Source: Setoptus koraiensis
Taxonomy: Eukaryota; Animalia; Arthropoda
Assembly (NCBI GenBank): GCA_048013815.1
Contig: CM106585.1
Location: 10,540,001 to 10,604,000 of the forward strand
DNA length: 64,000 bases
Reading direction: 5' to 3'
The notes under the pieces are model-generated. The model had not been told where the DNA came from, searched no databases, and saw nothing but the letters and a program-made list of their open reading frames with translations. Below are positions 4,830-21,020 of the stretch, piece by piece. The position numbers and the translations under genes were made by a program. The first letter of the stretch is position 1; each line of letters opens with the position of its first letter.

Positions 4830-6146
4830 TGCGAGGGCTTCACTGTTCACACTGAGATGTCATCAATCCGAATGGGGCCATCGACACCGCGCTGCTAAGT
4901 GGCGCTGCTGACGCTGATGCAAATGAAACGAAATGCCACTCGGCTCGAATCGCAATCGCTGGTTGAACGCTGAAGGGAGCGAGGTCTGTGCGCAAACTAA
5001 TTGATTGACTATTAGTTATTATTGGTTGTCAGTTGTGATTGGTTGTCGGTTGTTGTCAGTTGTCGGTTGTTGTCAGTTGTGGGTCGTTGCTAGTTGTCAG
5101 TTATGAGTTGTTGAGTCGATGGGTCATTGGCTGTTGTTGTTGGCCGTCGTTTGGCTGAAATGTCATGCAAATGGCCAGTGACTCGCGCGTGATTTGCGAC
5201 AAGTGCCAGCGTCTAACTGTCCATTGGCTCACTGTTGGCTGGCCGCTTTTTGTTGCTCTGTTGCCGGTCGCTTTTTTGACTGGTTGCACTAGCCTGGCGG
5301 AACCGAAATGAGCCTCTGCAAGGGCGATAATACTTTCAGTGTTTGGGTTGAGGCCCACTGGATATAAACACAAACATCGATGAATATATACGCACAGCAC
5401 AGACGAAACTGCGCACAACCGCACGTTCAAACCGGCCCCTCAGTTCGTTGCGACTCGCACCACAACAAGACACATTATAGAGACGAGGAGCCTCAGTGGG
5501 CCGGCGGGCCCCACTGCGCACGCCTAGCCTCACTGTGTCACACACACACACTGGGTTTGGACACACTGGAGCAAACTGAGCCAACGCGCTGCATTCAATG
5601 GCCAGATTGCGCAGCCAGATTCAATAGCTGGTGTGATAGTGATGCCTCGGTGCAAGGCACCCGGGCAAACCCGGCCAATTGCACCGGCCACCAGCGGCCA
5701 TCGGAAGCGAAACGAGGAGCACGATCTATTGACAACAAAATAATATTTTGAAAATATTGCCCGATTGCCATTTGAATCGCTGCGTTGCTGGCCGCCCAGC
5801 TGATTGCAACTGTTTGATAAAAATTGATGAAAGCTTGATGAAATTGATATGACAAGTTACATAATAGGCATCTCAACTGTGTCATGACTAATTAATGCAG
5901 TGTAAGCCTCAGTCGACCTGCGACCGGCGTCCGACCGGCGACTGGCGACGATTTCATACGACTTCGCAGCGAATCATTTGCAACTACAACTACGCGTCTA
6001 TTTGTTTTTACCTGTTTATACTCTATTGTCCATTGAGGCGTCTCGCGTTGTCAGCGAATGTTGCGGCCGAAGTTTGGTTTTGCTCGTGCTCGCATCGCCT
6101 GCGGATGCGCTTCCGCTTGCTCGGACGCTCATTTTCTAAAAATTCA

Positions 6147-6197
6147 TAATTTCAACAAATTGTTAATTTCGACAAATTGTTAATTTCGACAAATTGT
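6147..6197. repeat. 17-bp tandem repeat x3
   Basis: Unit TAATTTC(A/G)ACAAATTGT. Confidence 0.9.
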
Positions 6198-7538
6198 TTA
6201 TTTCGACGAATGCTCATCTTCGTCAAATGCGGCCGGCCCGACGAGACGGACACAACAACAAGTTCGAGCGGTTTGTTTCGGCCAACGAATTGAACGAATT
6301 TGTCTATAGAGGCGTCGCAATTCGACGCTCAGATTGCTTGTGTGCCAGCGCCAGCCGATTGGGCCGCAGCCTCATAATGACAACACGGTATTCTCCAATT
6401 GGCCCCAATGGAACTTGCTCAACTTGGCTGGCGCCCCCGCATGCACCTTTGCAGCGGGCGAGCAACGTTGTTGCGAGTCAAGTTGTTGCGAGTTTGTTGC
6501 GAGCTAGACAGTTGGCCGGGCCATTAGCCCACGAGCCCATTAGGCCAACAAATGGCATATGTGCGGCGCAAGCCGCACGAGCACGCACTGGGGACCGGCA
6601 AGTGGGGCCAGAGTAATAAGTAGTGATATAGTGACAGTAATTTGCTCAACTGGGCACAGTTTAACTTTGCAGTGGTCAGTTGGAGCGGTTTGCGGGCCTC
6701 GATGGCTCGGTGGGTCGTTGTAAGTGGCGACATGGCGCAACATGATGCGCACAGATGAGGGCCACTTTAATTGAGTGCTCGTGGCCGGTTCAACAACTGA
6801 CACAACTGACAAGCCAGGCCGTTCCGGAAATATTGAGCAAGGGCCAGTATTGATTATGAGCGGTGTTGTTTAAACTTTTGCGCTTTATTAATTATCATCG
6901 CTGCGAGCGGCCATCAGCCGCCAGTTGTGAGCCGTGAGTGTATGGATAATTGATTCAAGAAATTCAGAGCACGTGGTAGCGTCGTCGAGTGAGCTCGTTT
7001 ATCTTTGCCGTTGTCGTGTCTTGGCAACAGATAAACCACGAGCACTAAACAGAGCGACACGAGCAGTAAATAGAGCGATGGACACAGCTCGCTAGTTGCA
7101 ATAAAACAACAAGAGGAAACTCTCAATTAGTCGCTGGCCAGCCAGAGGGCGCCCGTCAAAAAATGATACAATCTCACTGATTGTGTTGCACCAAACGTGT
7201 AACGCAAGCGAGGCGCCCACAACAAGTCGCCAGCTTGACATGGATAAAAGGCGACCTAGACTCGACCGTCGCAACGAGCTCGCCATTAAGCATTTGGGAG
7301 CGATTCGAGTGCAGTTAGAGCTCAATTGTTTCGGTGCACTTGTTGTCGGATCGGACAAGTGCCGAGACAGTCAGTTAGCTGGGCATAATGTCACAACAGT
7401 CAAAACAGCGTCTTGAGTGTCTTGAGATTGCAAAGGGCTCATTACTGTTGTGACGCAACTTGGCGGCGACATTGCGGCATTGTCGTTGCAAGCATTTGCT
7501 TGCAATCGCTATTATTGCTTGGCTCGCCAACTCGCCAT

Positions 7539-7582
7539 TCAATGTTGCAGTCAATGTTGCAGTCAATGTTGCAGTCAATGTT
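7539..7582. repeat. 12-bp tandem repeat x3.7
   Basis: Unit TCAATGTTGCAG. Confidence 0.9.
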
Positions 7583-9795
7583 ATTGGCTGGGCCGTTCTC
7601 GAGACGGCCAGACACACAAACAAGCACGACGCTGCTGTTTGTTATGTTAATTAGAAGCTCAGTTTGTCGCCATGACTAACAACTAACTCGCTGTGTCTCT
7701 CTTTGTGATGTAATTGTACTTGATGAAGTTACGCAACCTTAATGACAGCGAGCGCAGCGTTTTAGTTGTCACTGCCAAAGCCACTGCCAGTTGTTAGTTG
7801 CAATTGCGAATTGCATCACACTGTTGCAGCAAACTGTCGCCAATGAACGCCGGCGCCCATTTGCGGCCCGACCATTTGCGGGCCGCCCAAGAACAAGCCC
7901 GTGTACACAGACTCGAACCGCACAAACTCGAATGTCTTGGCCGATACCCGGCGCGGCCCAGTAGCCGGCCAATAGCCGGCCCGTGTGCCCGGCACCATTG
8001 GCACCCGACGATGGCGTGCTGGCCAAGCGAAATGAGAAATTGATCGAGTGACAAGTGTGCAGTCATCAATCATTTGTTTCATTAGTGATTGTGATAGACG
8101 CCGCCGCAACAACAACAGCAACAACCAAAAAACAGATTTATGTTTGTCGACGGCGACCGACACGACAAACGAACAAAATATCAACGCTCATATCCTCATT
8201 CAAACAACACTGACAACTAACGGCTAGATGATTGTTGTCCGGCTAATTTATTGTTTATCGCTCGCTGCATACTTGAGACTCACACAAAATATATTCACAC
8301 AATATATCATTTATTTTGCTGACTAATCACACACTCCGTGAGCGTCCATACATCTAGACCATATCCAAGGGACAAATTTAATCGCTCGCCAGGACAAGAT
8401 ACACTGATTAATGCGTCGCAAATTACATATGAGTCAGGGGTCCGCAATCAGTGGCCGTGCATTGCGGGGGCGGGGGACCAGCGCATCGCAATCGATATCG
8501 GCAACGAGCGTGGCCGACACGACACTGTGAGTGGGCTGAAGTCGAGCGAAAATCGCCGCAACCTGCTGTTCGCTGCGAACAGTTCGCATTGTCGCTATTG
8601 GGTCGCCCTGCCAGCCAATAAAATAAAAGCTCGTCTGCTTTCAATCAATGCGAGCGAGTTTATCTGACAGCACGATAAAACGACGACAGGTGCCGACTGA
8701 CTTTGTTGTCGACGATTATCTCACGACGACAGGCCGGCCTGCGTGTCGTCTGACAACGCCAGTCTCGTTGTTGTTGTTTGAAAATCTGTACTGCACACTA
8801 GTGACTGGATTTGCTGGACGGGCGCCGAAAACGTTGTCAGAATACAGATGAGCTAGAAGTGACCGGCTATGTTTAGTATGGCGCGGCAGATAGTACAAAA
8901 TTGCAATTGCTAATACAGTGTAACTGTCAATGTTTAAACTGTCAATTTGATAGTCGATCCTCAATGCCGTTCGAGATCGCGAGATTCCTTGCAAGATTCT
9001 TTGCAAGGTGCAAAGACAACAGCACAACAGCATGAGCGACGAAACCAAACGAAACGCGATGGAAAAAGAAAGAGTCAGAGGGATATTTCACAGTATTAGG
9101 TCACTCCTCAGCGACTCCTTTGTAAGGATCTGCCTGTCGCTGGCTGCTGCGGAATGGCCACTAATTTATTGTTTGACCTTTGTGTTGAGCTCCTCTTCTT
9201 CTTCTTCTTTTTTGCCCGTCTAGTCACTTGACAACGCTTAAAATTTTTCTTTCTTTTTTTTTATTGATATATACGCTGTTACATAATATGATGATGCATG
9301 CTTGCGTTTACAAGTCTGAGCAGCTCTTGCTCGTCGTGCTTAATGGCGATCAATTATTGTGATAAATGAGGTGTGAGCTGTTTGTGTTTTCGACGTCGTC
9401 GTCTCCTTTTTCTCGCTGCCTCCTCATATATACAGTATATGTAGTATTTTAGTCTCATATGTAGTCTAGTTATTAGTGTGTTTGTATATAACTTATTTTT
9501 GGTATGTTTTGTTGCTTGATGTTGTCGTTTTCGCAAAGCTAAATCGCATAAGGCAGTATGGTTGCATTTGTGCATCTGTGTCAAGCCCGAAGTCGCCCGA
9601 AAACTGAAATAAATACTCAAACTGTAAGTGCAAGGTGCTCATACAGTTTGAGAGCGCATCTCATCCAATGAGTATTTATAATGACTAACTCAACAATCTC
9701 GTCTTGCGCTCACAATCAAAGCTCACTCGCTGTCTTGGCTCGCAAAGGTAACAAGTGCAATCCGTTGTGCCAACAAATATAAGCTGACTGGCTGG

Positions 9796-12700
9796 CTAAG
9801 CAGTGTCGTGATACTCGATGACAATCTCTGGCGGTGGCGCGCTCGCTATGGCTCCTGTTAGCGACGTTGTCGCTTGCTTCCTAGGTGACACTTTTATAAT
9901 GTTGTCAGAGCAGCTTGAAGAGCAAATGTCAGACCTTTGACATTTGGTTGGCGTTGAATTGACACTGTTGCTGGGTCCGGTATTGTCACCGTTGTAATTG
10001 TTGCGATTGTTTGCATGCGACGGAGAGGCCAAAATTTTGCTCACATTGGCAGAATAATCAAATTCTTCGCTAGTGAGAAAGTCGTTATACGTCGAATTTC
10101 TATCATCCTCTTCCTCATCTTCGTCCTCCTCATCACCGTAGGCGTCTGTGTTTGGCGGAGAATTCAAGCTACTTTTGTCATTGACATCATTATCACAATT
10201 ATCACCGTTATCATCCTCATCGTCGTCCTCTGCATGCGATCCCGGCGAGGACAAGCGACTATTCAGCGCCTCATCATCGTCCTGCTCCGCATCATCGTCG
10301 TCGTCGTCATCGTCGCCGCCAACATCCAGAGAGCCGTCCTCCGACAAAGAGTCGGGCTCATCGTCGAGATGGTCATTGTCGTAACTGGACGTTGACGAGC
10401 TAGACAATGTTGATTTTAGACCAGAGCTGCCGGTATCAGAGGATCCAACAGAAGAAATGGAGAATTGTTGCTCCTCTTCTTGATTGCTCTGATTGTTTGA
10501 TCGCTTGCTGTCCAATCGCAGCTGAATATCTTCCAGTTCGTCTTCGTCCATCGAGCTTGAGCGCCTAGACGACAATTCGAAACCAACTCTCTCACTAATC
10601 TTTTCACAATCATTGTCGTCTTCTTGGTCGTCGCGGTTGTGTTGCTCGTCGCCGCAAGATAGATGCCCATTTTCTGAGCTACGACAACTACTAGAATTGT
10701 GTGTTGTGCCGCTCTCATTATTATCATCATCGGATGAGATCTTTTTATTGTTGACATGGTGCCCATTATTGTCGTGGACAATATCATTATTGATATTATT
10801 GGCTTTGGTGTTGTCGTCGCTCGTTCTAGAATCTATTGTCAACGGTACATTAGCAGCATTGTCATCCAGTATACTCTTGTACAATGCACTGTAGTCAACT
10901 TGTTGATTCAAGAATTCCTCTTTAGACTTGACTCGCTCTTTGATTTTGTCCACTCCATTCATGACCTTTTCATCGTCATTATCAATATTAGTAGTAGTAG
11001 TCATATTTAAGCCATTGTAATCGCCATCACCTGCTACATCAGCCATACCAATTTGGCGCATCTGACGCAATGATGATTGACAGATGACACAAATGAAATT
11101 ATACACAATTTCAGAATCGCCTAGTTGCATGTTATCCATTGCCTCATCTATGCCATCATTATTACTATCATTGTTGTTTGTTAGTTGTGATGATGAGTTT
11201 GCGTTGTTGACACGACCGTTATATGATTGTTGTTTACCATCATCAGCGCCGTTACCGTTGCTTTTATCATTGTTTCTAATTGTTGTTGTGAGCTGTTGTG
11301 ACTTTATCTCATTCAGTCTCAACCTGACATCGCATTTAGAACAAGTTAAACAGCTCCTATGAACTATTGAATCATCAATGACAACTTTATCAATGGTTGC
11401 AACTGAATTTTTACATCTAATGCATACGGCATTCTGGCTATTAGTGCCAATAGGAATGGAGTGATTAAATCGTTTATTGTCATTGACTGCGTTAGCTTGG
11501 CTGCCGTTGTTTTGCTGCTGTTGTTGCTGCTGTTGTTGGTTTCTTTTATTTGAGCCATTTGATGACAGTTCACTGATTGTGCTTGAAGCCGACGATGAGC
11601 CACCAATGGAACTGGCAGTTTTTGCAGTGATAGCAGTTGTTATCTTACTATTTATAGACGATGATTGTGTTAACGCATGATTAGTTTCGACAACATCCTT
11701 ATAAACATTACCACCACCTATGTACTTTTTCTCATCGCTTAATTGCGATTGTCCCCCCAATCTACCATTGATACCGTTTCTGTTGCCGCTCATGTTGTTG
11801 TTGTTGTTGCTGCTGTTGATGCTGCTGTTGTCATTCAATGAGGCACGACTACGATAACTAGTGTAATTGTTGACAGGTGCATACTTATTCTTTGGTTTGT
11901 TCAAACACAAATGATCGTAATGTTGATGTTCGTTTTGCTTTTCATCTTCGTCGTCGTCGTCTTCAAACAACTTCTTTATAACTCTCTTGTGACGACTAGA
12001 ACTGTAAATTGAATTATCGTCACTTCTTTTGCTGGTGCCCGAAAGTTCACCTTTTATTAGATTAACCCACGCGTGCGATCGCGAACCCAATGAGAACTCA
12101 TGACTCTTGTTGCCACTGAGTGAAGAATTGTCATTTGTGTTTGAATTACCCGATGAACCATCACGGCGATATATTTGATTTTTAGTAGCTACACCGTTGG
12201 CTATTTCACTTGGTCTTCTCAATTTATCCGCCATCTCTCTTATTCTTCCCTTAAACACCTCAACCTGCTTTTCCGGTTTTGTGTATTTTCGTCCTGCTTT
12301 CGTGCTATCTTCCACAATATTGGCAACCTTTCTACCAGGTGAATTGTTCTCTGGGCCAGATGCTGTCAACGAGTGACTATTTCTATTATTCTCACATTCT
12401 TCGTACAACATTTGTTTATTGTGATACTTGGCCAGTCTCTCTTCCCAGCATTTGACATTCCAATCGTCTTTAGTTAATTTCATTATTGGCATTTTGGTCT
12501 TCTTTTTCATTGTTAAATCTTTCTCATTGTTCAAAGTTGAGTTTGTCACAAACATCTCTTGCAATGTTGCAAATTGGGGCAAATTTCTTATGTCATCTAT
12601 GTCATTGCTTGTTCTGTCTCTGGCAGCGACAATGGCGGCAGTGGGACTACTACTCAGCCCGTATGATTCGCTCAATTTATTTTCAAAACTCTTCACTCGT

Positions 12701-15700
12701 TCAGCGAAAGAAGCACAACGTCTTACGGAGCCACCGCCGGAAAGATCGTCCGACGAGCTGCCATTCTCACGATTGGCTCGCATCATGTCTCTATAGATGG
12801 CCGCTGCTCCGATTAGAGCATTGGCGCTGCCTCTTTTGCCATAGGTAGGTTGCAGACGCTTCAGAATCTCCTCTCTTTTAGCACCGTTACTATTTTGTTC
12901 TCGTCTATGTCGCAGACACTCGTCAATGTCTCTAGCTCTGCGAGCCTCTAACGAGACAAGATTATTGGCGGATGGCGTCGTTCCGGACAGCGACGACAGA
13001 GGCATTGGATAATCTCTTATGATCTCCTCGTAACTGCAACCTTTCACCGGCGATGTCAAATGCTCACCAGACAAATGATTGTTGTTGTCTGTTTGTGACG
13101 ATGTGTCGATATCATTATTATTATTGTTGGTTGTTAGATTCTTGTAAGAAAGCTCAAACTCCAAAAGAGAGTCGGTGTAACCTGAAGGAGACTTGTTGTG
13201 CTTTGATGACGATCGTGAATTGCTGGTGTTGTTGCTGCTTGATGTTTGACGTTTTCTTTGGGGTGACGGAGAAAGTATCGATAATTGTTGTCTGCTTGAT
13301 GCTTTTGAATTTTGACGAGAAGATGAACGAGATGTAGACCGACACTGGCTACGATTCTGATTTTTGATTGACAGCTTATTGTTGCTATGAGTGTTAGTGT
13401 TTGAGCTAGATGAGTTGCCTGTTTGAAGTTTTGATTTCTTCGAACGTTTGCTTAGAGTATTTGGTGATATCAATCTAGAACGGTGACTACTACTATTGGC
13501 TGTGTTGTTGTCGGATAAGTTATTTAGTATTGACTTAGATACATCTTCTTTAAGATCTTCAAATAAACTTATTCCGTTGTGATAACCGAGCAAATTTCTT
13601 ATCTGACTAGGAACGACTAAGTGTCTATTTAAATTTGGATATCTTGTATGCGGATTCAATGTCCAATGAGAATAATTTTGATGTAAATTTTCACTAGTGG
13701 TTTGAGCCAACAAACGATAGATGGACTCTCTTTCGGCTATTACGCTGAGCACAGATTTAATATTATAATTGTTAGTTAAGGCAGTAGAAGTGGTATTATT
13801 CTTATCGGCATCGACACAATTCGATTGGTTTTTTTGTTGTTTCATTATCGGACATTTGTTGACAGCCCATTGCCTGCACATCCAAGCGGTATCCAACGAC
13901 GATAGAAAACCTCTTGCACATCCGCTTCCTGTAGGCCAAAATGGCTCCAACAAACTATCACCAACAAGATTAATAAGTACAAGACCACCTTCTTTTGTTT
14001 GTAAGGCCTTGCAGGCATTTGAAGCAGCATACATCGATGTGAAATCAAACATGGCACAATCTTCTTGACCGTAATGATTTAAGGCAAAATTTAGAGGCTC
14101 CAGACCGGTTGTCCAACTTGCGGCGTCTTTGGCGTACTCAAGTAACGCTTTTCTATTAATGTTGTCTTCGCAAAGTAACTCGTTGGTCGTAGCAAAATCT
14201 TTTAAAAGAACTTTTCGTTCCAGAAGTGAGCGTTTTTGGGCCGTCATAACAAAATAGTGAGTGTCGTCTTTATAATAGCAAATATTCTCCAATAATATAT
14301 TTGTATCACTTGCCAATGCTTTGAATAGATCCTGATTGTAAATATAAGAAATACCTGATATTTCGGGTATTTTCGCCTCGGCGGGTGTTTGCGCATTAAT
14401 AAAGTTAGCGGTTATTGCTATGGCCAATCTACCTCTAAACTCCTTTCGAGGAAAAAATGTTTTCAAAGTATTGCGTCTTCCATCGGCACCAATGATGACG
14501 TCCCATTTGATTTGATGCAATTCAGTTTCCTGTAATGGGTAATCACATTTAAAATGGGCATTCGAGCCAAACAATCTACTGTTTGTTGATGACTGTTTCT
14601 GACTATCTGTAGTTTGTTCTGTCTGCTGCTGAGGGTGGTCATCCATTCTTTGGTCACTATCAATCGCCGTTTCATGATTATCTGCCGATCCATTAGCGCC
14701 ATCGTCGTCATCAATTAACGGTATGGGCGATGCGCATATTGACGATGGTCTAGTTTCGAGCAATACAACATGGTTGTTTTTAATGCCAGCATTGCCCTCC
14801 TCCGACATGTAGTCGTCATCGTCCTGATTGGCGTTACTCTCCGTTGACTTGTCACATGATGTTCCCGAATCGCCGTCAATAATATCACAATTATTGGTTG
14901 TGCCATCGGCATTGTTAAGGCTAGCCGGACAAAGGCCCATAAATGAGCAGGAGTCGCGGAAGTCGCATCCTATCATGAGGCATATTTTCAGTAATATCAA
15001 TTGTATCTGTCGAATTGAGATATGGTCAATGCTGCCAGCACAAAATTTTCCATAGAATTTTTTAGCGCCCAAACTTCTGAGGTCCTCTATCACAAAGGGC
15101 CAAAGATGTAGAACGTTATTCCTAGAGAAGCGACTTCGCTTTTCTGCTATAACCACTCTCTTTGCTCCCAATAATTGCAATTCAATCGCTGTTCTTAATC
15201 CAGCCGGTCCAGCACCCACGATCAAACAACTGTAGCCTTGCATGGCATTGTTACTGCTACTGTCTTGTTGTTGTTCTTGATGCGATGATGAGTATGAATG
15301 ATCCGGCATTGTTTGGTCACTGTTGGTGGACTTGTTGTTTTGATAGCATCGATGCAGGGCTCTTCGGTCAATTTTGGCAAATATAGCCGCCGCTTTCCAA
15401 TTTTTTCTGACTCTATTGGTGAGTACGGCCTTTTTGAGAGTTGGAAAGAACACATTGAATTGACAGGGGTTCAGGTCTAAATAGTTGAGCATACGGTGAT
15501 GAATAGCTAAAACGTTTCTAAGGGTAGACGCCTCGATGAATAAATCAAATAAATCCGCCAAAGAGACCTCATTGGAGAGCAATTGAATAATGGGTTGCTT
15601 CTTATCTGTGCCATTATTGTTGCTGCCATGTTGTTGTGCAGTTAATCTATTTAGTACCACTTTGTCCGTTTCATTATTATCAACAGTAATGGGCTCGTGC

Positions 15701-15738
15701 TCGCTTTCTAGTGGGGATTTCTGTTTTTGTTGGCCCAT
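9796..15738 (-). CDS. MICAL: MICAL family F-actin methionine monooxygenase
   Basis: Single ~1,980-aa ORF from ATG 15738 (MGQQKQK). It has the FAD motif LIVGAGPAGLRTAIEL and the MICAL hallmarks FSRNNVLHLWPFVIEDLR, FCAGSIDHISIRQIQL, AMFDFTSMYA, VGDSLLEPFWPTGSGCARGFL and YPNLN. A LIM-type Cys/His cluster and an acidic low-complexity C-terminus follow. Confidence 0.95.
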   Translation of the reverse strand: MGQQKQKSPLESEHEPITVDNNETDKVVLNRLTAQQHGSNNNGTDKKQPIIQLLSNEVSLADLFDLFIEASTLRNVLAIHHRMLNYLDLNPCQFNVFFPTLKKAVLTNRVRKNWKAAAIFAKIDRRALHRCYQNNKSTNSDQTMPDHSYSSSHQEQQQDSSSNNAMQGYSCLIVGAGPAGLRTAIELQLLGAKRVVIAEKRSRFSRNNVLHLWPFVIEDLRSLGAKKFYGKFCAGSIDHISIRQIQLILLKICLMIGCDFRDSCSFMGLCPASLNNADGTTNNCDIIDGDSGTSCDKSTESNANQDDDDYMSEEGNAGIKNNHVVLLETRPSSICASPIPLIDDDDGANGSADNHETAIDSDQRMDDHPQQQTEQTTDSQKQSSTNSRLFGSNAHFKCDYPLQETELHQIKWDVIIGADGRRNTLKTFFPRKEFRGRLAIAITANFINAQTPAEAKIPEISGISYIYNQDLFKALASDTNILLENICYYKDDTHYFVMTAQKRSLLERKVLLKDFATTNELLCEDNINRKALLEYAKDAASWTTGLEPLNFALNHYGQEDCAMFDFTSMYAASNACKALQTKEGGLVLINLVGDSLLEPFWPTGSGCARGFLSSLDTAWMCRQWAVNKCPIMKQQKNQSNCVDADKNNTTSTALTNNYNIKSVLSVIAERESIYRLLAQTTSENLHQNYSHWTLNPHTRYPNLNRHLVVPSQIRNLLGYHNGISLFEDLKEDVSKSILNNLSDNNTANSSSHRSRLISPNTLSKRSKKSKLQTGNSSSSNTNTHSNNKLSIKNQNRSQCRSTSRSSSRQNSKASSRQQLSILSPSPQRKRQTSSSNNTSNSRSSSKHNKSPSGYTDSLLEFELSYKNLTTNNNNNDIDTSSQTDNNNHLSGEHLTSPVKGCSYEEIIRDYPMPLSSLSGTTPSANNLVSLEARRARDIDECLRHRREQNSNGAKREEILKRLQPTYGKRGSANALIGAAAIYRDMMRANRENGSSSDDLSGGGSVRRCASFAERVKSFENKLSESYGLSSSPTAAIVAARDRTSNDIDDIRNLPQFATLQEMFVTNSTLNNEKDLTMKKKTKMPIMKLTKDDWNVKCWEERLAKYHNKQMLYEECENNRNSHSLTASGPENNSPGRKVANIVEDSTKAGRKYTKPEKQVEVFKGRIREMADKLRRPSEIANGVATKNQIYRRDGSSGNSNTNDNSSLSGNKSHEFSLGSRSHAWVNLIKGELSGTSKRSDDNSIYSSSRHKRVIKKLFEDDDDEDEKQNEHQHYDHLCLNKPKNKYAPVNNYTSYRSRASLNDNSSINSSNNNNNMSGNRNGINGRLGGQSQLSDEKKYIGGGNVYKDVVETNHALTQSSSINSKITTAITAKTASSIGGSSSASSTISELSSNGSNKRNQQQQQQQQQNNGSQANAVNDNKRFNHSIPIGTNSQNAVCIRCKNSVATIDKVVIDDSIVHRSCLTCSKCDVRLRLNEIKSQQLTTTIRNNDKSNGNGADDGKQQSYNGRVNNANSSSQLTNNNDSNNDGIDEAMDNMQLGDSEIVYNFICVICQSSLRQMRQIGMADVAGDGDYNGLNMTTTTNIDNDDEKVMNGVDKIKERVKSKEEFLNQQVDYSALYKSILDDNAANVPLTIDSRTSDDNTKANNINNDIVHDNNGHHVNNKKISSDDDNNESGTTHNSSSCRSSENGHLSCGDEQHNRDDQEDDNDCEKISERVGFELSSRRSSSMDEDELEDIQLRLDSKRSNNQSNQEEEQQFSISSVGSSDTGSSGLKSTLSSSSTSSYDNDHLDDEPDSLSEDGSLDVGGDDDDDDDDAEQDDDEALNSRLSSPGSHAEDDDEDDNGDNCDNDVNDKSSLNSPPNTDAYGDEEDEDEEEDDRNSTYNDFLTSEEFDYSANVSKILASPSHANNRNNYNGDNTGPSNSVNSTPTKCQRSDICSSSCSDNIIKVSPRKQATTSLTGAIASAPPPEIVIEYHDTA

Positions 15739-17791
15739 TTTGGCAGACCAACAATCAAATGCTTGATACAAACGACTGTTTCGAGAGCTGGTTGAGTATG
15801 TAGCTAGGTAAGATGAGTAAGTGGGGTATCACATGGAGACGATGTTAAATGGACTAGAATTGTTTGTTTGTTTGTTTTTTGATCTTGAGTATTGATTATT
15901 TAATGGTGATGAATATTGTGTTGTAGAGTTGATTATTTTGAATATTTTCTATTTAATGTATGTCAGCTGAGTGAATAATTATTGGGTGTCCGTCGGACAC
16001 ACAGTGAGTAGACAGTTTACAGTTTGTTGTTCACGTCGACACACACTCACACACACAAGTAACGGCATCGAGTGCGTTGTCCAGTTTTTCTTGTCTCGAT
16101 ATAATATAATGTGTTGTTGCTCCTATAAATTCTTCTATATCAAAATATTTCTCTATTCTTTGTCTGTTGTAGTTGAAAAATATTTTCTATTGTCGTCAAT
16201 ATTTATTTTTATTGTCCAGCTGGTCTGGTGTTCACGATGTCATGCATCGAGTGCTTGCAGAATCGAGTGTCTCTTTGTTGTTGCTGCTGCCGCTGTTGTT
16301 GTTGCTGCTCTCACTGTGTTAGACTGGGCCAAACCATGATGCAATTCTTCTTTGGTTAGCCATCTAAATATTTCCAGTTATTCCAACTATTGATTTTCAC
16401 TATTATGATTGCTGTTGCTGCTGTTGTTATTGTGTATCACTGAAAATGGAAGTACACATTTCGAATGGGACTGAGGAACAAAGACTAAACTTTATTGTTG
16501 TGTTAGGCAAGCTATATTGGTCGTCGTCGTCGTCGTAGTCATTAGTACACTATAGTGGAGAGGCTAAACATCAAGATGGCAGTCATAGTGTAGACTTGTC
16601 TATATGATTTATAATGCGAGACTGAACTGCACTGAACAACAACAAGACAGACTCAAAACAAACGGTACACGTATAATGCTGCAATTGTTGCCACTTTTGA
16701 ATTGTGTCTCCTTTGACCTCCGCTAGCTCGACCATTGGCGCTGCTCAGCTATATCATTATAATAGCGGTACAGTTATGCGCCAATACAAGAGAACGCAGC
16801 AAAGCGCCATCTAACTTTTAATGAGATCTTTCTATTTAGACACACGCACACATTTCTCTCTATCGGATAAAGTCTGTCGTCCAATTCCACACGAATGTTA
16901 CAACTAACAAGAATCATTGGTCCGATGGGCATGAGAAATTTAAACTCCGCCCAAAGCTATCTGTCTAGCTATTAGCTTTTGGCTAGTGGTAGAGGTACAA
17001 CAACAACATTATCGCAGTAGTAGTAGTAGTAGTTATATTTAACTGCTCCCTCTCTCTCTCTCTCTCTCTCCATTCTGACTCCGTCTTCTTTCTTCACCCT
17101 TTTACCACCACCTCAGCCGTGCTTATTATTGCACCGTGTTTATTATCAAACCGTTAGCTAGTTAACTCCATTATGCGCTCCATTATGTACTCCATTATGT
17201 TCGAGCTCGACTCGAAATATCCATTCATCGTCATCACATAGCATCACACAACGGCGAGCCCTGAGTCGCGCCCAACTTGAGTCGCATCCATACGACCCGC
17301 ACAACAGCAACTACTACCACTCCATCAGTCATAACAATGTCAGCTGTTGTTGTCGCCCATGCAGTAACAGCAACAACAACATCCTAATAACGGTCAGTCC
17401 GGCTCAAAAATTTGAGGTGAGTCGCGAGATTGCGATTTGATGATGCAAACCTCACCTCCGCGAGTCATCAAGACAGCTAGCAGCAACAACACCAACACAA
17501 TCACCAGCAGCACAAGCAACAGCAGCGCCAACTCAAAATTGTGTATCAGCTGCTACATTTTTCTGTGCTTAAGTGCTAAAGTAAATAATAAATTCATTAC
17601 ATGTAATATGTAATATTATCATCATTATTAGTATTGTCATTATTATTATTTCTTTCATTTCATTATTTCTACTATTACTATTATCATCATCATCAACGTT
17701 ATCGGTTCGGAGCGAGCTCGCCCGGTCCGCCCTCCCCTAGCCAAACGTTATTTTTTCTACGATTATCTGTATCATCTTTTTTACTGCAATC

Positions 17792-18367
17792 ATGACAACA
17801 AAACATCCATCAGATCACAAGGCGCCAACACAATCGCCAAAAACGCAAACAACAACCCAGACACCGCATGGACCACTCACGGACGAGGACAGGGATAAAT
17901 TAAAAGAAAAACTGACACCACTTCAATTCAAGATAACACAAGAAAAACAAACAGAGTTGCCAAATTCGGGAAAATTCAATAAATTCAAAGAGACAGGCAC
18001 TTACGAATGCGTTGTATGCGGTCAGAAATTGTTTAGTTCTGATAAGAAATTTGAATCGGGTTGTGGATGGCCGGCCTTCTACGATACTGTTATTGACGGT
18101 GGCATACGCGAACAAAGAGATGAATCTTTAGCCGGTGGTTCTGCCAATTCGGAATTTGCTGAGAAATTTCTCGTCAGAACAGAGATATTATGCTCAAGGT
18201 GTGACGCTCACCTTGGCCACGTATTTGACGACGGACCTCCCCCGACAAGGCGTCGCTATTGCGTCAACTCGGCCTCAATGAGGTTCAGAACCCCAGATGG
18301 AAAATTGCTTGTAGACGAAGGCCCTGATAGGAATGCTCAACCTGACCTTTATGATTCATTAAAATGA
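17792..18367 (+). CDS. MsrB: Methionine-R-sulfoxide reductase B (Cys-type MsrB/SelR)
   Basis: Motifs LTPLQFKITQEKQTE, zinc pairs CVVC and CSRC, KFESGCGWPAF, HLGHVFDDGP and catalytic RYCVNSAS. Confidence 0.97.
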   Translation: MTTKHPSDHKAPTQSPKTQTTTQTPHGPLTDEDRDKLKEKLTPLQFKITQEKQTELPNSGKFNKFKETGTYECVVCGQKLFSSDKKFESGCGWPAFYDTVIDGGIREQRDESLAGGSANSEFAEKFLVRTEILCSRCDAHLGHVFDDGPPPTRRRYCVNSASMRFRTPDGKLLVDEGPDRNAQPDLYDSLK

Positions 18368-18461: not shown

Positions 18462-21020
18462 TCACGATTGCTCAGGCCTAGATTCTAACGGTCTCATAAA
18501 TTTCCAACCATCATCAGATGGGTCGAAGTACTGCAACATGTTTTTGGTATTCGATTGTAACGTTGGATAGTAAGGAGTAATAAAAGAAATGTTAGTGGAT
18601 AAACTCTTGAAAATGATGATTTTGCAATCGTAAATTATAAAGTGGCCACTACTCACCCTTGTCTCCCATTTGACTCCCTTTTCTTGACGCTCCTTTAATG
18701 ACTCTCTTTGCTTTTGTTCTATGAACGTCTTAGCCGCTGTGGCATTGGCGACATCCCGAAACTTCAAGGCCCTGGTAACCTCTTTCCAAACATTACGTGA
18801 TTCAAATGTCTCTTGGGCACTTATTGGCCGAACATGTTTCTTAATCACCGGTAATGAACTAGTATCGACAAATATTTCCTTCTCACCTGTGGCTGTACTC
18901 TTGGAGTACATGATCCCATTCCATTCGCCATCAATATTCAGATATGGCTCATTATTGGGCCTAAGAATTTCACCTAAAACACGGTGCTTCTTGCCCCCAT
19001 AAAACGGTTTAGTAACAAATTCGATATTAGCTGAGTACTGCGTCTGAGCACATTTGATAGTTACTGATCCTCCAAGTTCCATCCACGGAACTGTTAATAT
19101 ACTTCTGCCGAAAGCGCTTGGAAATGTGCAAGTATAAGTCTCATTATGATCTAACAAATTAATAGTTCCATGTCCAATATTGTTGACACCAATGGATAAG
19201 CCGAGATATTTTGATTTTGTATAAACATGAGCACAGCATGTAATTCGTTTAGCTTTGTTCTCTGCGTAGAATGCGGAAACTGGAGGGTGATGTGATACTT
19301 GTTCGGCAACAAAAATCAGACTATCCTTGGCGAGCGTGCTAGGGAATTCATCATTTAAATCACATGTGGTAGATTCTTTCTGTCTAGTGTAGCTGTCGGC
19401 CGAGAAAGTTGTTTCATCCGTAGTTCTGTTATTGTTTCCGCTTTTTTCTTTTACGTGACCATTGTCATTTTGATTATTGGCTTCTTGTAGCTGCCAATGA
19501 CAACGGAAAATCTCGCCCAATATAGGATTGTATGGCTTCTTGGGCAGGGAAGAGTTTCTTCCAGCATGGAAAGCGGACAAATACCAGCGAACTACTTGGG
19601 TCATACGTTCTTCTGGTGTCTTGTGATCGGGAATGTTGGAAAATAAATCAGGGTGGGCAAAAAAATCAGCGTACATCTCTAATAGTGATCTCTTTTCTAA
19701 GATAAAAGTTGGTAAAACCACCTTAGTCAAGTCCATTCCAATCCTAATTTGTGACAATAAATGTTTTATCACACTACCATTGCCGTCTTCCATATTTCCT
19801 AGATCCTCTTCTTCTTCATCATATAACGATTCCCAATCAACACTCCCCTCCATGCTTGAGTTGGCTACTTTTGAATGATCCTGTGATAATATAATTTGTT
19901 GTTGCTGATGAGTTGGTGTCGACAGTGGTGATGATGATGGATGTCCTTTACTGATATTACTGCAGGCATCTAAATTATCATGATGGCTGGTAGTATTATT
20001 CAATATTGCTGGAGTCTGTTGCTGTTGTTTATTGATTTCCGAACAGTAAGACGTTTGCGCAGGATTAGAAGTATTAGTGGCAATTTGTTGTTGCTGTGTG
20101 ATTGCAATTAATTCCTTACTCAATGTCAGATTTGTTAAATTTCTATGTAATACATTTTCTCTTGTTGTGGCTGGCGTATCATCATCTGCATCGTAGAATG
20201 GCTCATCATCATCATCGTCGTCGCTAACGTCAACCATTTGCCGCTGCTGTTCATTATTTTGTGGTGTTATTAATAATGATGTTTGGTTGTAGCTACTAAT
20301 ATTGCGCTGCTTTTTCAACGACAACGGCGATGTCGATGACGCTGCCGTCGCCACTGTCGCTGATGTTACTGTTGTGGCCGCGGCAGCTGAATTACAATTT
20401 GAACTATCGACTAGAGCTTGATCTGTAGCTATCGAGTGCCTGTACTGTGGGTAGTGATAAATTTTGCCACTATTATTATCCCTATAACTGATACTATTGT
20501 CTGAGGCCAGTTCCGACGATGATTGCGGCGATAATCTAGCCAATCTATTACTGCTGTTATTGTCTAGTGAGGTGGCCTGTTGTTGTTGTTGTTTTAGGCG
20601 CTGCTTATCCTTGTTTCTGGATTTATCCTTTTTTCTTGATGGGGCCCTGATAGTGGCACCGTCGGCAAGTGGCGCACCACCAGATGGTGACGAGCTAGAA
20701 TTTGCCTGAGATGATGCAGATAAATTGGCTACTGACGAGGTGTTAGGCGAATCGGACGATGCAGCTGACTTAAGTGGTATTGCCTTCACTGTAACCTTGG
20801 CTATCTGTAATAGTACTATTGCATGCTTGATCGAGCCTAATAAATTATCTGAATTGTTCTTTATGGTTATGAGACCATCTCGTTCTTGATCACTAGAGGC
20901 CAATTCTATTTTCTTATCTAGCTTCTCTGTTTGCTCAATAAGTAACTGTAAGTAGGCATCAACCTCTGCCAATTTTTGATCGAAATCGTTGATAGAAACT
21001 TTCTTGTGACTATGGTACAT
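18462..21020 (-). CDS. OSBPL9: Oxysterol-binding protein-related protein, ORP9-like; 2 exons (21020-18657, 18530-18462)
   Basis: ORP9-type coiled coil DFDQKLAEVDAYLQLLIEQ, FFAT-like EPFYDADD, and ORD motifs GMDLTKVVLPTFILE, KKPYNPILGE and EQVSHHPP. Intron 18656-18531 (GTGAGT...TTGCAG) joins WETR|YFDP. Confidence 0.93.
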   Translation of the reverse strand: MYHSHKKVSINDFDQKLAEVDAYLQLLIEQTEKLDKKIELASSDQERDGLITIKNNSDNLLGSIKHAIVLLQIAKVTVKAIPLKSAASSDSPNTSSVANLSASSQANSSSSPSGGAPLADGATIRAPSRKKDKSRNKDKQRLKQQQQQATSLDNNSSNRLARLSPQSSSELASDNSISYRDNNSGKIYHYPQYRHSIATDQALVDSSNCNSAAAATTVTSATVATAASSTSPLSLKKQRNISSYNQTSLLITPQNNEQQRQMVDVSDDDDDDEPFYDADDDTPATTRENVLHRNLTNLTLSKELIAITQQQQIATNTSNPAQTSYCSEINKQQQQTPAILNNTTSHHDNLDACSNISKGHPSSSPLSTPTHQQQQIILSQDHSKVANSSMEGSVDWESLYDEEEEDLGNMEDGNGSVIKHLLSQIRIGMDLTKVVLPTFILEKRSLLEMYADFFAHPDLFSNIPDHKTPEERMTQVVRWYLSAFHAGRNSSLPKKPYNPILGEIFRCHWQLQEANNQNDNGHVKEKSGNNNRTTDETTFSADSYTRQKESTTCDLNDEFPSTLAKDSLIFVAEQVSHHPPVSAFYAENKAKRITCCAHVYTKSKYLGLSIGVNNIGHGTINLLDHNETYTCTFPSAFGRSILTVPWMELGGSVTIKCAQTQYSANIEFVTKPFYGGKKHRVLGEILRPNNEPYLNIDGEWNGIMYSKSTATGEKEIFVDTSSLPVIKKHVRPISAQETFESRNVWKEVTRALKFRDVANATAAKTFIEQKQRESLKERQEKGVKWETRVSSGHFIIYDCKIIIFKSLSTNISFITPYYPTLQSNTKNMLQYFDPSDDGWKFMRPLESRPEQS

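What the first reader, a model, noticed from the sequence alone, without database searches (positions are those of the whole stretch)
9796..18367. MICAL and MsrB, writer and eraser of actin methionine oxidation, are head-to-head neighbours
Seen: MICAL (minus strand, ATG 15738) and MsrB (plus strand, ATG 17792) diverge from a ~2.05-kb spacer with no other recognisable gene. A donor-like GAG|GTGAGT at 17417 suggests an MsrB 5'-UTR exon that would bring the promoters closer still. Established: MICAL stereospecifically oxidises actin Met to Met-R-sulfoxide, disassembling F-actin, and MsrB/SelR reverses this. I am not aware of these two genes being linked in fly or human. Inference: this may be a co-regulated two-gene redox switch for actin on a shared bidirectional promoter. 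Chance adjacency in a compact genome remains possible.
Basis: partly seen in the sequence, partly recalled or inferred. Interest (0 to 1): 0.75.

Follow-up and report, generated by a model that had tools for sequence, protein, structure and literature searches.

The report
Conserved MICAL–MsrB divergent gene pair
In gall mites, the gene for the enzyme that oxidises actin (MICAL) and a gene for the enzyme that can undo that oxidation (MsrB) have stayed back-to-back neighbours since near the base of the group while almost all other gene order was scrambled, which suggests, but does not prove, that the two are regulated together.

Summary
An intronless MICAL gene (minus strand, 9796-15738) and an intronless MsrB gene (plus strand, 17792-18367) diverge from a 2,053-bp spacer in which I found no other gene.

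New here: the same head-to-head pair occurs in five other eriophyoid-mite lineages, with spacers of 2.5-4.2 kb. The window's species branches outside all of them, so the pairing dates to near the base of the group. One nested lineage has lost it. Halotydeus and Tetranychus lack it within 10 kb.

Flanking genes are not conserved; their orthologues lie megabases away in this genome. In some eriophyids the pair sits between an HSP20 gene and a membrane-protein gene. In this genome those two genes are direct neighbours 2.3 Mb away. So the pair has moved as a two-gene cassette.

The linked MsrB belongs to a mite-specific paralogue lineage; this genome has three MsrB genes.

Not shown: a shared bidirectional promoter, co-expression, or the proposed 5'-UTR exon. 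Spacers are long and barely conserved in sequence.

Verdict: a real, conserved linkage, probably held by cis-regulatory constraint. Functional coupling is plausible but inferred. This scan's notes hold no earlier record of the pair.

The parts
9796..15738 (-). MICAL coding sequence, single exon, 1,980 aa plus stop
   Evidence: ORF. Pfam Rossman_Mical 3e-51. PDB MICAL3 E 2.7e-147. It is the only MICAL in the 48.8-Mb genome.
13588..15561 (-). FAD monooxygenase domain of MICAL (about residues 60-717), interrupted by a low-complexity insertion of about 135 aa (residues 270-407) and a second of about 30 aa
   Evidence: Alignments to MICAL3 6ici and to spider MICAL P0149.
11317..11424 (-). Partial LIM zinc finger (residues 1439-1474)
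   Evidence: Pfam LIM scores 24.7 bits against a cut-off of 22.9 when the segment is scanned alone. It aligns to the spider MICAL LIM. No CH or bMERB domain is detected anywhere in the protein.
15739..17791 (.). Divergent spacer between the two ATGs, 2,053 bp, 40% G+C, rich in CAA/CAG and ATT microsatellites
   Evidence: No gene, tRNA or Rfam family found.
17047..17071 (.). (CT)n tract, GAGA-like on the other strand; 1.3 kb from the MICAL ATG and 0.74 kb from the MsrB ATG
   Evidence: Read from the sequence. A promoter role is inference only.
17414..17422 (+). Donor-like GAG|GTGAGT, candidate end of an MsrB 5'-UTR exon. A pyrimidine-rich TAG acceptor candidate ends at 17741.
   Evidence: Not verified by RNA.
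17709..17722 (.). GGAGCGAGCTCGCC, containing a perfect 10-nt palindrome, 70-83 nt upstream of the MsrB ATG
   Evidence: It is the longest invariant run (14 nt) upstream of the ATG in the alignment with the nearest relative's contig L016, apart from the 16-nt ATT-microsatellite run TTGTCATTATTATT.
17792..18367 (+). MsrB paralogue 'a', single exon, 191 aa plus stop; SelR domain at residues 41-166 (17912-18289)
   Evidence: Pfam SelR 2.4e-43. PDB MsrB E about 3e-36. Catalytic and zinc residues are conserved.
18462..21020 (-). Oxysterol-binding-protein gene, convergent with MsrB and 94 bp from its stop. Context only, not part of the conserved pair.
   Evidence: Pfam Oxysterol_BP 3.5e-68. It is adjacent to MsrB in the near relative L016 but in none of the eriophyid loci.

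Best explanation
MICAL and a mite-specific, bare-domain MsrB paralogue (probably cytosolic) form a divergent two-gene unit. The unit arose at or before the base of the sampled eriophoid mites.

Selection has kept it together because both genes depend on the 2-4 kb of regulatory DNA between them. A break in that DNA would therefore harm at least one gene.

The likely pay-off is coordinated expression. Wherever MICAL oxidises actin Met-44/47 to the R-sulfoxide, an MsrB that reduces Met-R-sulfoxide would be made alongside it.

Shown here: the two genes are intact and carry the catalytic motifs, the pairing is conserved, and the pair moves as a cassette. Inferred: shared regulation, co-expression, and the claim that this particular MsrB acts on MICAL-oxidised actin. 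A compact shared core promoter is not required and not shown.
For: 1. The pair is head-to-head in the window and in L001, L002, L006/L007, L008 and L019.

2. In the MICAL tree the window is sister to all 23 other eriophyoid MICALs, including Aceria tosichella. In the MsrB tree the window's a+b copies plus Fragariocoptes are sister to all linked eriophyid MsrBs. The pairing therefore spans the deepest split sampled.

3. Flanks are not conserved. No other ORF of the 64-kb window matches any of these loci. Orthologues of the eriophyid flank genes map 2-8 Mb away or to the other chromosome.

4. In L006/7 and L008 the order is HSP20 | MICAL-MsrB | membrane-protein gene. In this genome the orthologous HSP20 and membrane-protein genes are direct convergent neighbours at C1:12.818-12.822 Mb. 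So the pair was inserted or excised as one piece.

5. Published background: 'very little conserved gene order' among eriophyids, with only 5-41% of genes in syntenic blocks (bioRxiv 10.64898/2026.08.24.746826).

6. In the compact eriophyid loci the spacer (2.5-4.2 kb) is the largest intergenic target; the other gaps are about 70-560 bp. Yet breaks fell in the small outer gaps.

7. Two short collinear conserved boxes lie in the spacers of L001, L006 and L019, with a variant in L002.

8. MsrB/SelR reversal of MICAL oxidation is established in fly and mammals (PMC5772675 and PMC9982024, listed; my own knowledge of Hung et al. 2013 and Lee et al. 2013).
Against: No expression or TSS data could be obtained.

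Spacers are far longer than classic bidirectional promoters and almost unalignable between lineages. The two conserved boxes are missing from the window and from L008.

One nested lineage (L015) has no MsrB within 10 kb upstream of MICAL, so the linkage is dispensable.

The genome has two more MsrB genes, so MICAL reversal need not depend on the linked copy.

Only about seven lineages were sampled, and their species names are unknown. The functional link was the reason the pair was noticed, which is a selection effect.
Confidence: 0.45

Rival explanations
1. Regulatory entanglement without functional coupling (a 'bystander' arrangement). The long spacer carries the enhancers, alternative first exons or long 5'-UTR intron of one gene, most likely the developmentally regulated MICAL. 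MsrB merely sits at its far edge. Breaks are selected against for MICAL's sake, and the biochemical relation of the two products is a coincidence.
For: The spacer is 5-8 times the typical eriophyid intergenic length (PMC7738191). The conserved boxes lie nearer MICAL, 0.6-1.0 kb from its ATG against 2-3 kb from MsrB's. Conserved microsynteny in animals is often of this kind (my own knowledge of the genomic-regulatory-block literature).
Against: If only MICAL's regulation mattered, breaks close to the MsrB start would be tolerated. Yet MsrB kept its place in 6 of 7 lineages and travelled with MICAL when the cassette moved. The chance that a bystander is one of three MsrB genes among about 10,000 genes is small, although the way the pair was noticed weakens this argument.
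Confidence: 0.25
2. Historical accident. The two genes became neighbours once in the eriophyoid stem and have survived together by chance, with no selection on the linkage.
For: Any genome of about 10,000 adjacencies will retain some by chance. One lineage has lost the linkage without obvious harm. Spacer sequence is almost unconserved. Sampling is small and the lineages are not fully independent.
Against: None of the seven other adjacencies of the eriophyid loci that I mapped in this genome was kept. Published eriophyid comparisons show little synteny. The large spacer should have been the preferred break target. The pair moved as a unit.
Confidence: 0.25
3. A strict shared bidirectional core promoter, with TSSs less than 1 kb apart, brought closer by an MsrB 5'-UTR exon that ends at 17416.
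For: A consensus donor, AGGTGAGT, lies on the MsrB strand 375 nt upstream of its ATG. A random site has only about a 2% chance of falling in this spacer on that strand (derived). A (CT)n tract lies upstream of it.
Against: The putative exon would still leave more than 1.3 kb to the MICAL ATG. The donor region cannot be checked in the near relative because its contig ends 137 nt upstream of MsrB. Eriophyid spacers are even longer. There are no RNA data.
Confidence: 0.12

Closest known systems
Mical / SelR (MsrB) reversible actin methionine oxidation in Drosophila; MICAL1-3 / MSRB1 in mammals
   Same: The two enzyme families are the same. The MICAL flavin monooxygenase domain carries all FAD motifs. 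The MsrB carries its zinc CxxC pairs and catalytic Cys. Functional antagonism is established in those systems (papers listed).
   Different: In those animals the two genes are not reported as neighbours. Human MICAL1-3 and MSRB1-3 lie on different chromosomes (my own knowledge, not checked here). No paper in the library links MICAL, MsrB and synteny in a relevant sense. The mite MICAL lacks the CH and bMERB domains. The linked MsrB is a mite-specific paralogue.
Conserved divergent (head-to-head) gene pairs with bidirectional promoters
   Same: Divergent orientation, functionally related products, and retention across deep divergence while the surroundings rearrange.
   Different: The ATG-to-ATG distance is 2-4 kb rather than under 1 kb. 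There is no shared core-promoter motif across lineages and no expression data.
Genomic regulatory blocks (a developmental gene plus bystander genes held together by interleaved enhancers)
   Same: The intergenic region is unusually long for these compact genomes. It carries short conserved non-coding boxes and resists breakage.
   Different: The block contains only two genes, and the supposed bystander is biochemically tied to the target gene. No enhancer activity has been shown.

Membership tests
MICAL (F-actin monooxygenase) | N-terminal FAD-dependent monooxygenase domain with GxGxxG, DG and GD motifs | tested here: met
   Pfam Rossman_Mical 3e-51. MICAL3 structure 6ici matches at E 2.7e-147, with GAGPAGLR, GADGRRN and GDSLLEPFWPTGSG aligned.
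MICAL (F-actin monooxygenase) | Calponin-homology (CH) domain after the monooxygenase domain | tested here: not met
   No PF00307 hit at E up to 1 on the whole protein or on segments. Where spider MICAL has its CH domain, this protein has Ser/Asn-rich low complexity. The domain is also undetected in Halotydeus, Tetranychus, Brevipalpus and two eriophyid MICALs, so this is a clade-wide trait of an orthologous gene.
MICAL (F-actin monooxygenase) | LIM domain | tested here: inconclusive
   Only the first zinc finger matches: 24.7 bits against a cut-off of 22.9 on the segment, 18.3 bits on the whole protein.
MICAL (F-actin monooxygenase) | C-terminal bMERB (DUF3585) Rab-binding, autoinhibitory domain | tested here: not met
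   No PF12130 hit. The C-terminal 470 aa or so are acidic low complexity, not conserved with eriophyid MICALs.
MICAL (F-actin monooxygenase) | Orthology: groups with named MICALs in a tree and is single-copy | tested here: met
   Tree. One copy in the genome.
MICAL (F-actin monooxygenase) | Oxidises actin Met-44/47 to the R-sulfoxide | not testable with these tools
   Needs an enzyme assay.
MsrB / SelR (methionine-R-sulfoxide reductase) | SelR fold with two CxxC zinc motifs | tested here: met
   Pfam SelR 2.4e-43. CVVC and CSRC align with the solved MsrBs.
MsrB / SelR (methionine-R-sulfoxide reductase) | Catalytic Cys (or Sec) in the RxCxN motif, and a resolving Cys in GCGWP | tested here: met
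   RYCVNS and GCGWP are invariant in the alignment.
MsrB / SelR (methionine-R-sulfoxide reductase) | Reduces MICAL-oxidised actin | not testable with these tools
   Needs an assay. Inferred from the fly and mammalian enzymes.
Bidirectional-promoter gene pair | Divergent orientation | tested here: met
Bidirectional-promoter gene pair | Transcription starts less than about 1 kb apart | not testable with these tools
ATG-to-ATG distances are 2.05-4.2 kb.
Bidirectional-promoter gene pair | Correlated expression | not testable with these tools
   No RNA data were available.
Conserved microsyntenic pair | Adjacency and orientation retained in several divergent lineages beyond background synteny | tested here: met
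   Six of the seven informative eriophyoid lineages are linked. None of the seven other mapped adjacencies is retained. Published background synteny is low. The sample is small.

The most novel reading that the evidence does not exclude
Eriophyoid mites evolved a dedicated eraser for MICAL. In this reading a lineage-specific MsrB paralogue, reduced to the bare catalytic domain, was placed head-to-head with a CH-less and bMERB-less MICAL, which may therefore lack the usual autoinhibition. The two are co-transcribed from a common regulatory region, forming a two-gene redox cassette for actin. The cassette would have been kept, and even relocated intact, since about the Permian crown of the group.
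Probability: 0.25. Interest if true: 0.7.

Novelty: new variant of a known kind. Interest (0 to 1): 0.5.

Why it matters
Gene-neighbourhood evidence for functional coupling is routine in bacteria but rare in animals. Here an oxidising enzyme and the enzyme that reverses the same modification have stayed neighbours through extreme gene-order scrambling. That is independent evolutionary support for MICAL and MsrB working as one regulatory module.

It also points to a specific MsrB paralogue to test, in mites whose MICAL lacks the CH and bMERB domains. Finally, it gives a clean case for asking why some gene pairs resist rearrangement in streamlined genomes.

If expression turns out uncorrelated, the pair is still a tidy example of regulatory entanglement, but of modest interest.

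Tried and rejected
TSSs, the UTR intron and co-expression remain untested.

2. Fragariocoptes setiger as a counter-example. Its MsrB sits next to EMC1, not MICAL. The tree shows it is the orthologue of this genome's paralogue b, not of the MICAL-linked paralogue a, so it is uninformative.

3. A hidden gene or mobile element in the spacer. None found.

4. Phylogenetic footprinting of the spacer. The nearest relative's contig ends 137 nt upstream of MsrB. The other lineages are too diverged; only two short boxes align within core eriophyids.

5. Polarising the cassette move through Tetranychus, where an HSP20 gene also follows MICAL. That HSP20 is not the orthologue of the eriophyid/G000 HSP20, so whether the pair was inserted or excised stays open. 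The 'empty' site holds no MICAL or MsrB remnants.

6. A shared core-promoter motif (TATA, Inr, DRE, GAGA, or the MsrB-proximal palindrome) across lineages. None is shared.

7. L020 (eriophyid) and L021 (Dinothrombium). MICAL sits at the contig end, so both are uninformative.

8. The three exons... no: the two exons of MsrB paralogue c (L013) were not joined. Only its larger exon was used in the tree and the alignment. The N-masked part of L012 was left alone.
Full report
WHAT IS THERE

The window is C1:10,540,001-10,604,000 of a 48.8-Mb assembly in two contigs. The best named protein matches are eriophyoid mites: Aceria tosichella for MICAL and Fragariocoptes setiger for MsrB.

On the minus strand a single open frame, 9796-15771, has its ATG at 15738 and encodes 1,980 aa. 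On the plus strand a single open frame, 17792-18367, encodes 191 aa. The ATGs are 2,053 bp apart.

The first protein is a MICAL.
- Pfam Rossman_Mical scores 3e-51, with an N-terminal FAD motif.
- The solved MICAL3 monooxygenase domain matches at E 2.7e-147, with all three FAD motifs aligned.
- Identity to spider MICAL is 48-51%.
- It is the only MICAL in the genome.

The second protein is an MsrB.
- Pfam SelR scores 2.4e-43.
- Solved MsrB structures match at about 3e-36.
- Both CxxC zinc motifs, GCGWP and the catalytic RYCVNS are present.

I found no tRNA, Rfam family, Pfam-recognisable ORF, conserved coding potential or repeated element in the spacer; only microsatellites repeat elsewhere in the genome.

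(a) This MICAL has no detectable CH or bMERB domain, and only half a LIM domain. The same holds for Halotydeus, Tetranychus, Brevipalpus and two eriophyid MICALs. Tick, spider and insect MICALs carry all of these domains. This is an acariform-wide architecture, not a defect of this gene.

(b) The genome has three MsrB genes.
- Paralogue a lies next to MICAL.
- Paralogue b lies at C1:20.31 Mb.
- Paralogue c lies on C2, and has an intron and a long N-terminal extension.

In the MsrB tree, a (with a near-identical Logan sequence) is sister to b plus the Fragariocoptes protein (support 97/90). That clade is sister to all eriophyid MsrBs found next to MICAL (88/86). Paralogue c groups with ordinary arthropod MsrBs.

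(c) A 2-kb gap between divergent genes is ordinary in this window; the others are 1.3, 2.1 and 3.6 kb.

IS THE LINKAGE MORE THAN CHANCE?

Contigs carrying relatives of either protein show the same arrangement, MICAL one way and MsrB the other. This holds in five further lineages:
- L001, spacer 2.9 kb
- L002, spacer 4.2 kb
- L006/L007, spacer 2.9 kb
- L008, spacer 2.5 kb
- L019, spacer 2.6 kb

In the MICAL tree the window's protein is sister to all 23 other eriophoid MICALs, among which Aceria tosichella is nested. The MsrB tree agrees. So the pairing spans the deepest split sampled. A recent preprint cites a Permian crown age for Eriophyoidea. I cannot name the species, so I say only 'near the base'.

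One lineage, L015, is nested beside the linked L008. It has no MsrB within 10 kb upstream of MICAL, which is a secondary loss.

Halotydeus (L010) and Tetranychus (L017) have other genes upstream of MICAL and no MsrB within 10 kb. The MICAL and the one MsrB retrieved from Brevipalpus lie on different chromosome-scale contigs.

Fragariocoptes looked like a counter-example, with MsrB next to EMC1. That protein is the orthologue of paralogue b, so it says nothing about a.

BACKGROUND SYNTENY IS POOR

Apart from MICAL and MsrB, no ORF of the whole 64-kb window matches any of these loci. Orthologues of the eriophyid flank genes lie elsewhere in this genome (MICAL is at 10.555 Mb):

| Flank gene | Position in this genome |
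|---|---|
| OST-HTH | C1:12.92 Mb |
| 417-aa gene of L001 | C1:2.62 Mb |
| GFO/IDH | C1:8.38 Mb |
| FERM | C1:2.17 Mb |
| Ankyrin (weak match) | C2:22.4 Mb |

This matches the literature. Only 5-41% of genes lie in syntenic blocks even among eriophyids (bioRxiv 10.64898/2026.08.24.746826).

THE PAIR MOVED AS A CASSETTE

In L006/7 and L008 the order is HSP20, MICAL, MsrB, then a membrane-protein gene with a conserved N-terminal segment.

In this genome the specific orthologue of that HSP20 shares 77-81% identity in the crystallin domain. The homologue of that membrane-protein gene shares 41-52% over its first 51-54 residues (pairwise E 1e-12). These two genes are direct convergent neighbours at C1:12.818-12.822 Mb.

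The two arrangements differ exactly by the presence of the MICAL-MsrB pair, so the pair was inserted or excised in one piece. I could not tell which. The 'empty' site holds no remnants. The HSP20 next to Tetranychus MICAL is not the orthologous one.

In the compact eriophyid loci the spacer is by far the largest intergenic target. Other gaps are about 70-560 bp, and the published A. lycopersici median is 538 bp. Yet the breaks fell in the small outer gaps.

WHAT IS IN THE SPACER

Sequence conservation between lineages is almost nil, with two exceptions.

- Two collinear boxes, GTGATAATGTTCAC (preceded by AACAATTG) and GGCAGAGGTTAGC, lie 131-135 nt apart. They sit 0.6-1.0 kb from the MICAL ATG in L001, L006 and L019, with a variant in L002. 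They are absent from the window and from L008. The sequence between the boxes is not conserved, which fits protein-binding sites better than an exon or an RNA gene.
- In the window, GGAGCGAGCTCGCC lies 70-83 nt upstream of the MsrB ATG. It is the longest invariant run in the 137 nt that can be compared with the nearest relative, apart from an ATT-microsatellite run.

The donor-like AGGTGAGT at 17415 is one of two such sites in 64 kb (1.16 expected). Its position on the MsrB strand makes a 5'-UTR intron plausible, with a candidate acceptor ending at 17741. That is unverified, and it would still leave more than 1.3 kb to the MICAL ATG. No core-promoter motif is shared across lineages.

WHAT COULD NOT BE DONE

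So there is no evidence on transcription starts, splicing or co-expression. The look-ups of encoding contigs were exhausted, which prevented wider outgroup sampling and fetching a closer relative's spacer.

INTERPRETATION

The linkage is real and old, and it is better retained than every other adjacency I could test. It has also travelled as a unit. I put selection on the linkage at about 0.7.

Within that, I favour coordinated expression of the oxidising enzyme and its reversing enzyme from a shared or interleaved regulatory region (0.45). The alternative is a pure bystander arrangement serving MICAL's regulation alone (0.25). Plain historical accident remains at about 0.25.

The strict version, a single bidirectional core promoter brought closer by a UTR exon, is a sub-case of the favoured reading. 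I rate it about 0.12 on its own, so the four figures are not meant to add up.

That MsrB reduces MICAL-oxidised actin is established in fly and mammals (papers listed). That this paralogue does so is inference.

NOVELTY

Neither the paper library nor this scan's notes record MICAL-MsrB linkage. Both enzymes are ordinary members of known families. New here are the conserved genomic coupling, the mite-specific linked MsrB lineage, and the CH-less, bMERB-less MICAL.

Noticed in passing
window 9796-15738 (-); also P0144, P0147, P0145, P0127, P0141: MICAL of acariform mites (this genome, eriophyids, Halotydeus, Tetranychus, Brevipalpus) has no detectable CH or bMERB domain and only a partial LIM domain. 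Tick, spider, horseshoe-crab and insect MICALs carry all of them. Loss of the autoinhibitory bMERB domain might change how the enzyme is controlled.
   Followed up: partly
G000 C1:20308806-20312186 (L012) and C2:1318952-1322290 (L013): There are two further MsrB genes. Paralogue b is the orthologue of the Fragariocoptes MsrB that sits next to EMC1. Paralogue c has an intron and an N-terminal extension of about 200 aa (possibly organellar), and groups with ordinary arthropod MsrBs. Part of L012 reads N (withheld) and was left alone.
   Followed up: partly
L001 7889-7912, L002 6854-6877, L006 7939-7962, L019 (spacer, reverse strand): Two short non-coding boxes are conserved in eriophyid MICAL-MsrB spacers: AACAATTGnnGTGATAATGTTCAC and GGCAGAGGTTAGC, 131-135 nt apart. 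They occur once per locus. They are candidate transcription-factor sites, nearer MICAL than MsrB.
   Followed up: partly
G000 C1:12818176-12821985 (L018 6177-9986): A membrane-protein gene (424 aa, with only its N-terminal 50 aa or so conserved) and a Gln-rich HSP20 gene are convergent neighbours here. In eriophyids the MICAL-MsrB pair lies between their orthologues.
   Followed up: yes
window 13588-15561 (-): The monooxygenase domain is interrupted by a low-complexity insertion of about 135 aa (residues 270-407) and a second of about 30 aa (632-661), relative to solved MICAL structures.
   Followed up: no
window 18462-21020 (-): The oxysterol-binding-protein gene ends 94 bp from the MsrB stop. 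Its long ORF seems to read through a short intron near the C-terminus. MsrB-OSBP adjacency is kept in the near relative L016 but in none of the eriophyid loci.
   Followed up: no
L017 27618-28181: In Tetranychus urticae an HSP20 gene also lies just downstream of MICAL, as in eriophyids. By best match it is not the same HSP20 orthologue, so the resemblance may be a coincidence.
   Followed up: partly
window 4851-9795: The 5 kb downstream of MICAL hold no ORF of 150 aa or more. I did not examine whether they hold a spliced gene.
   Followed up: no
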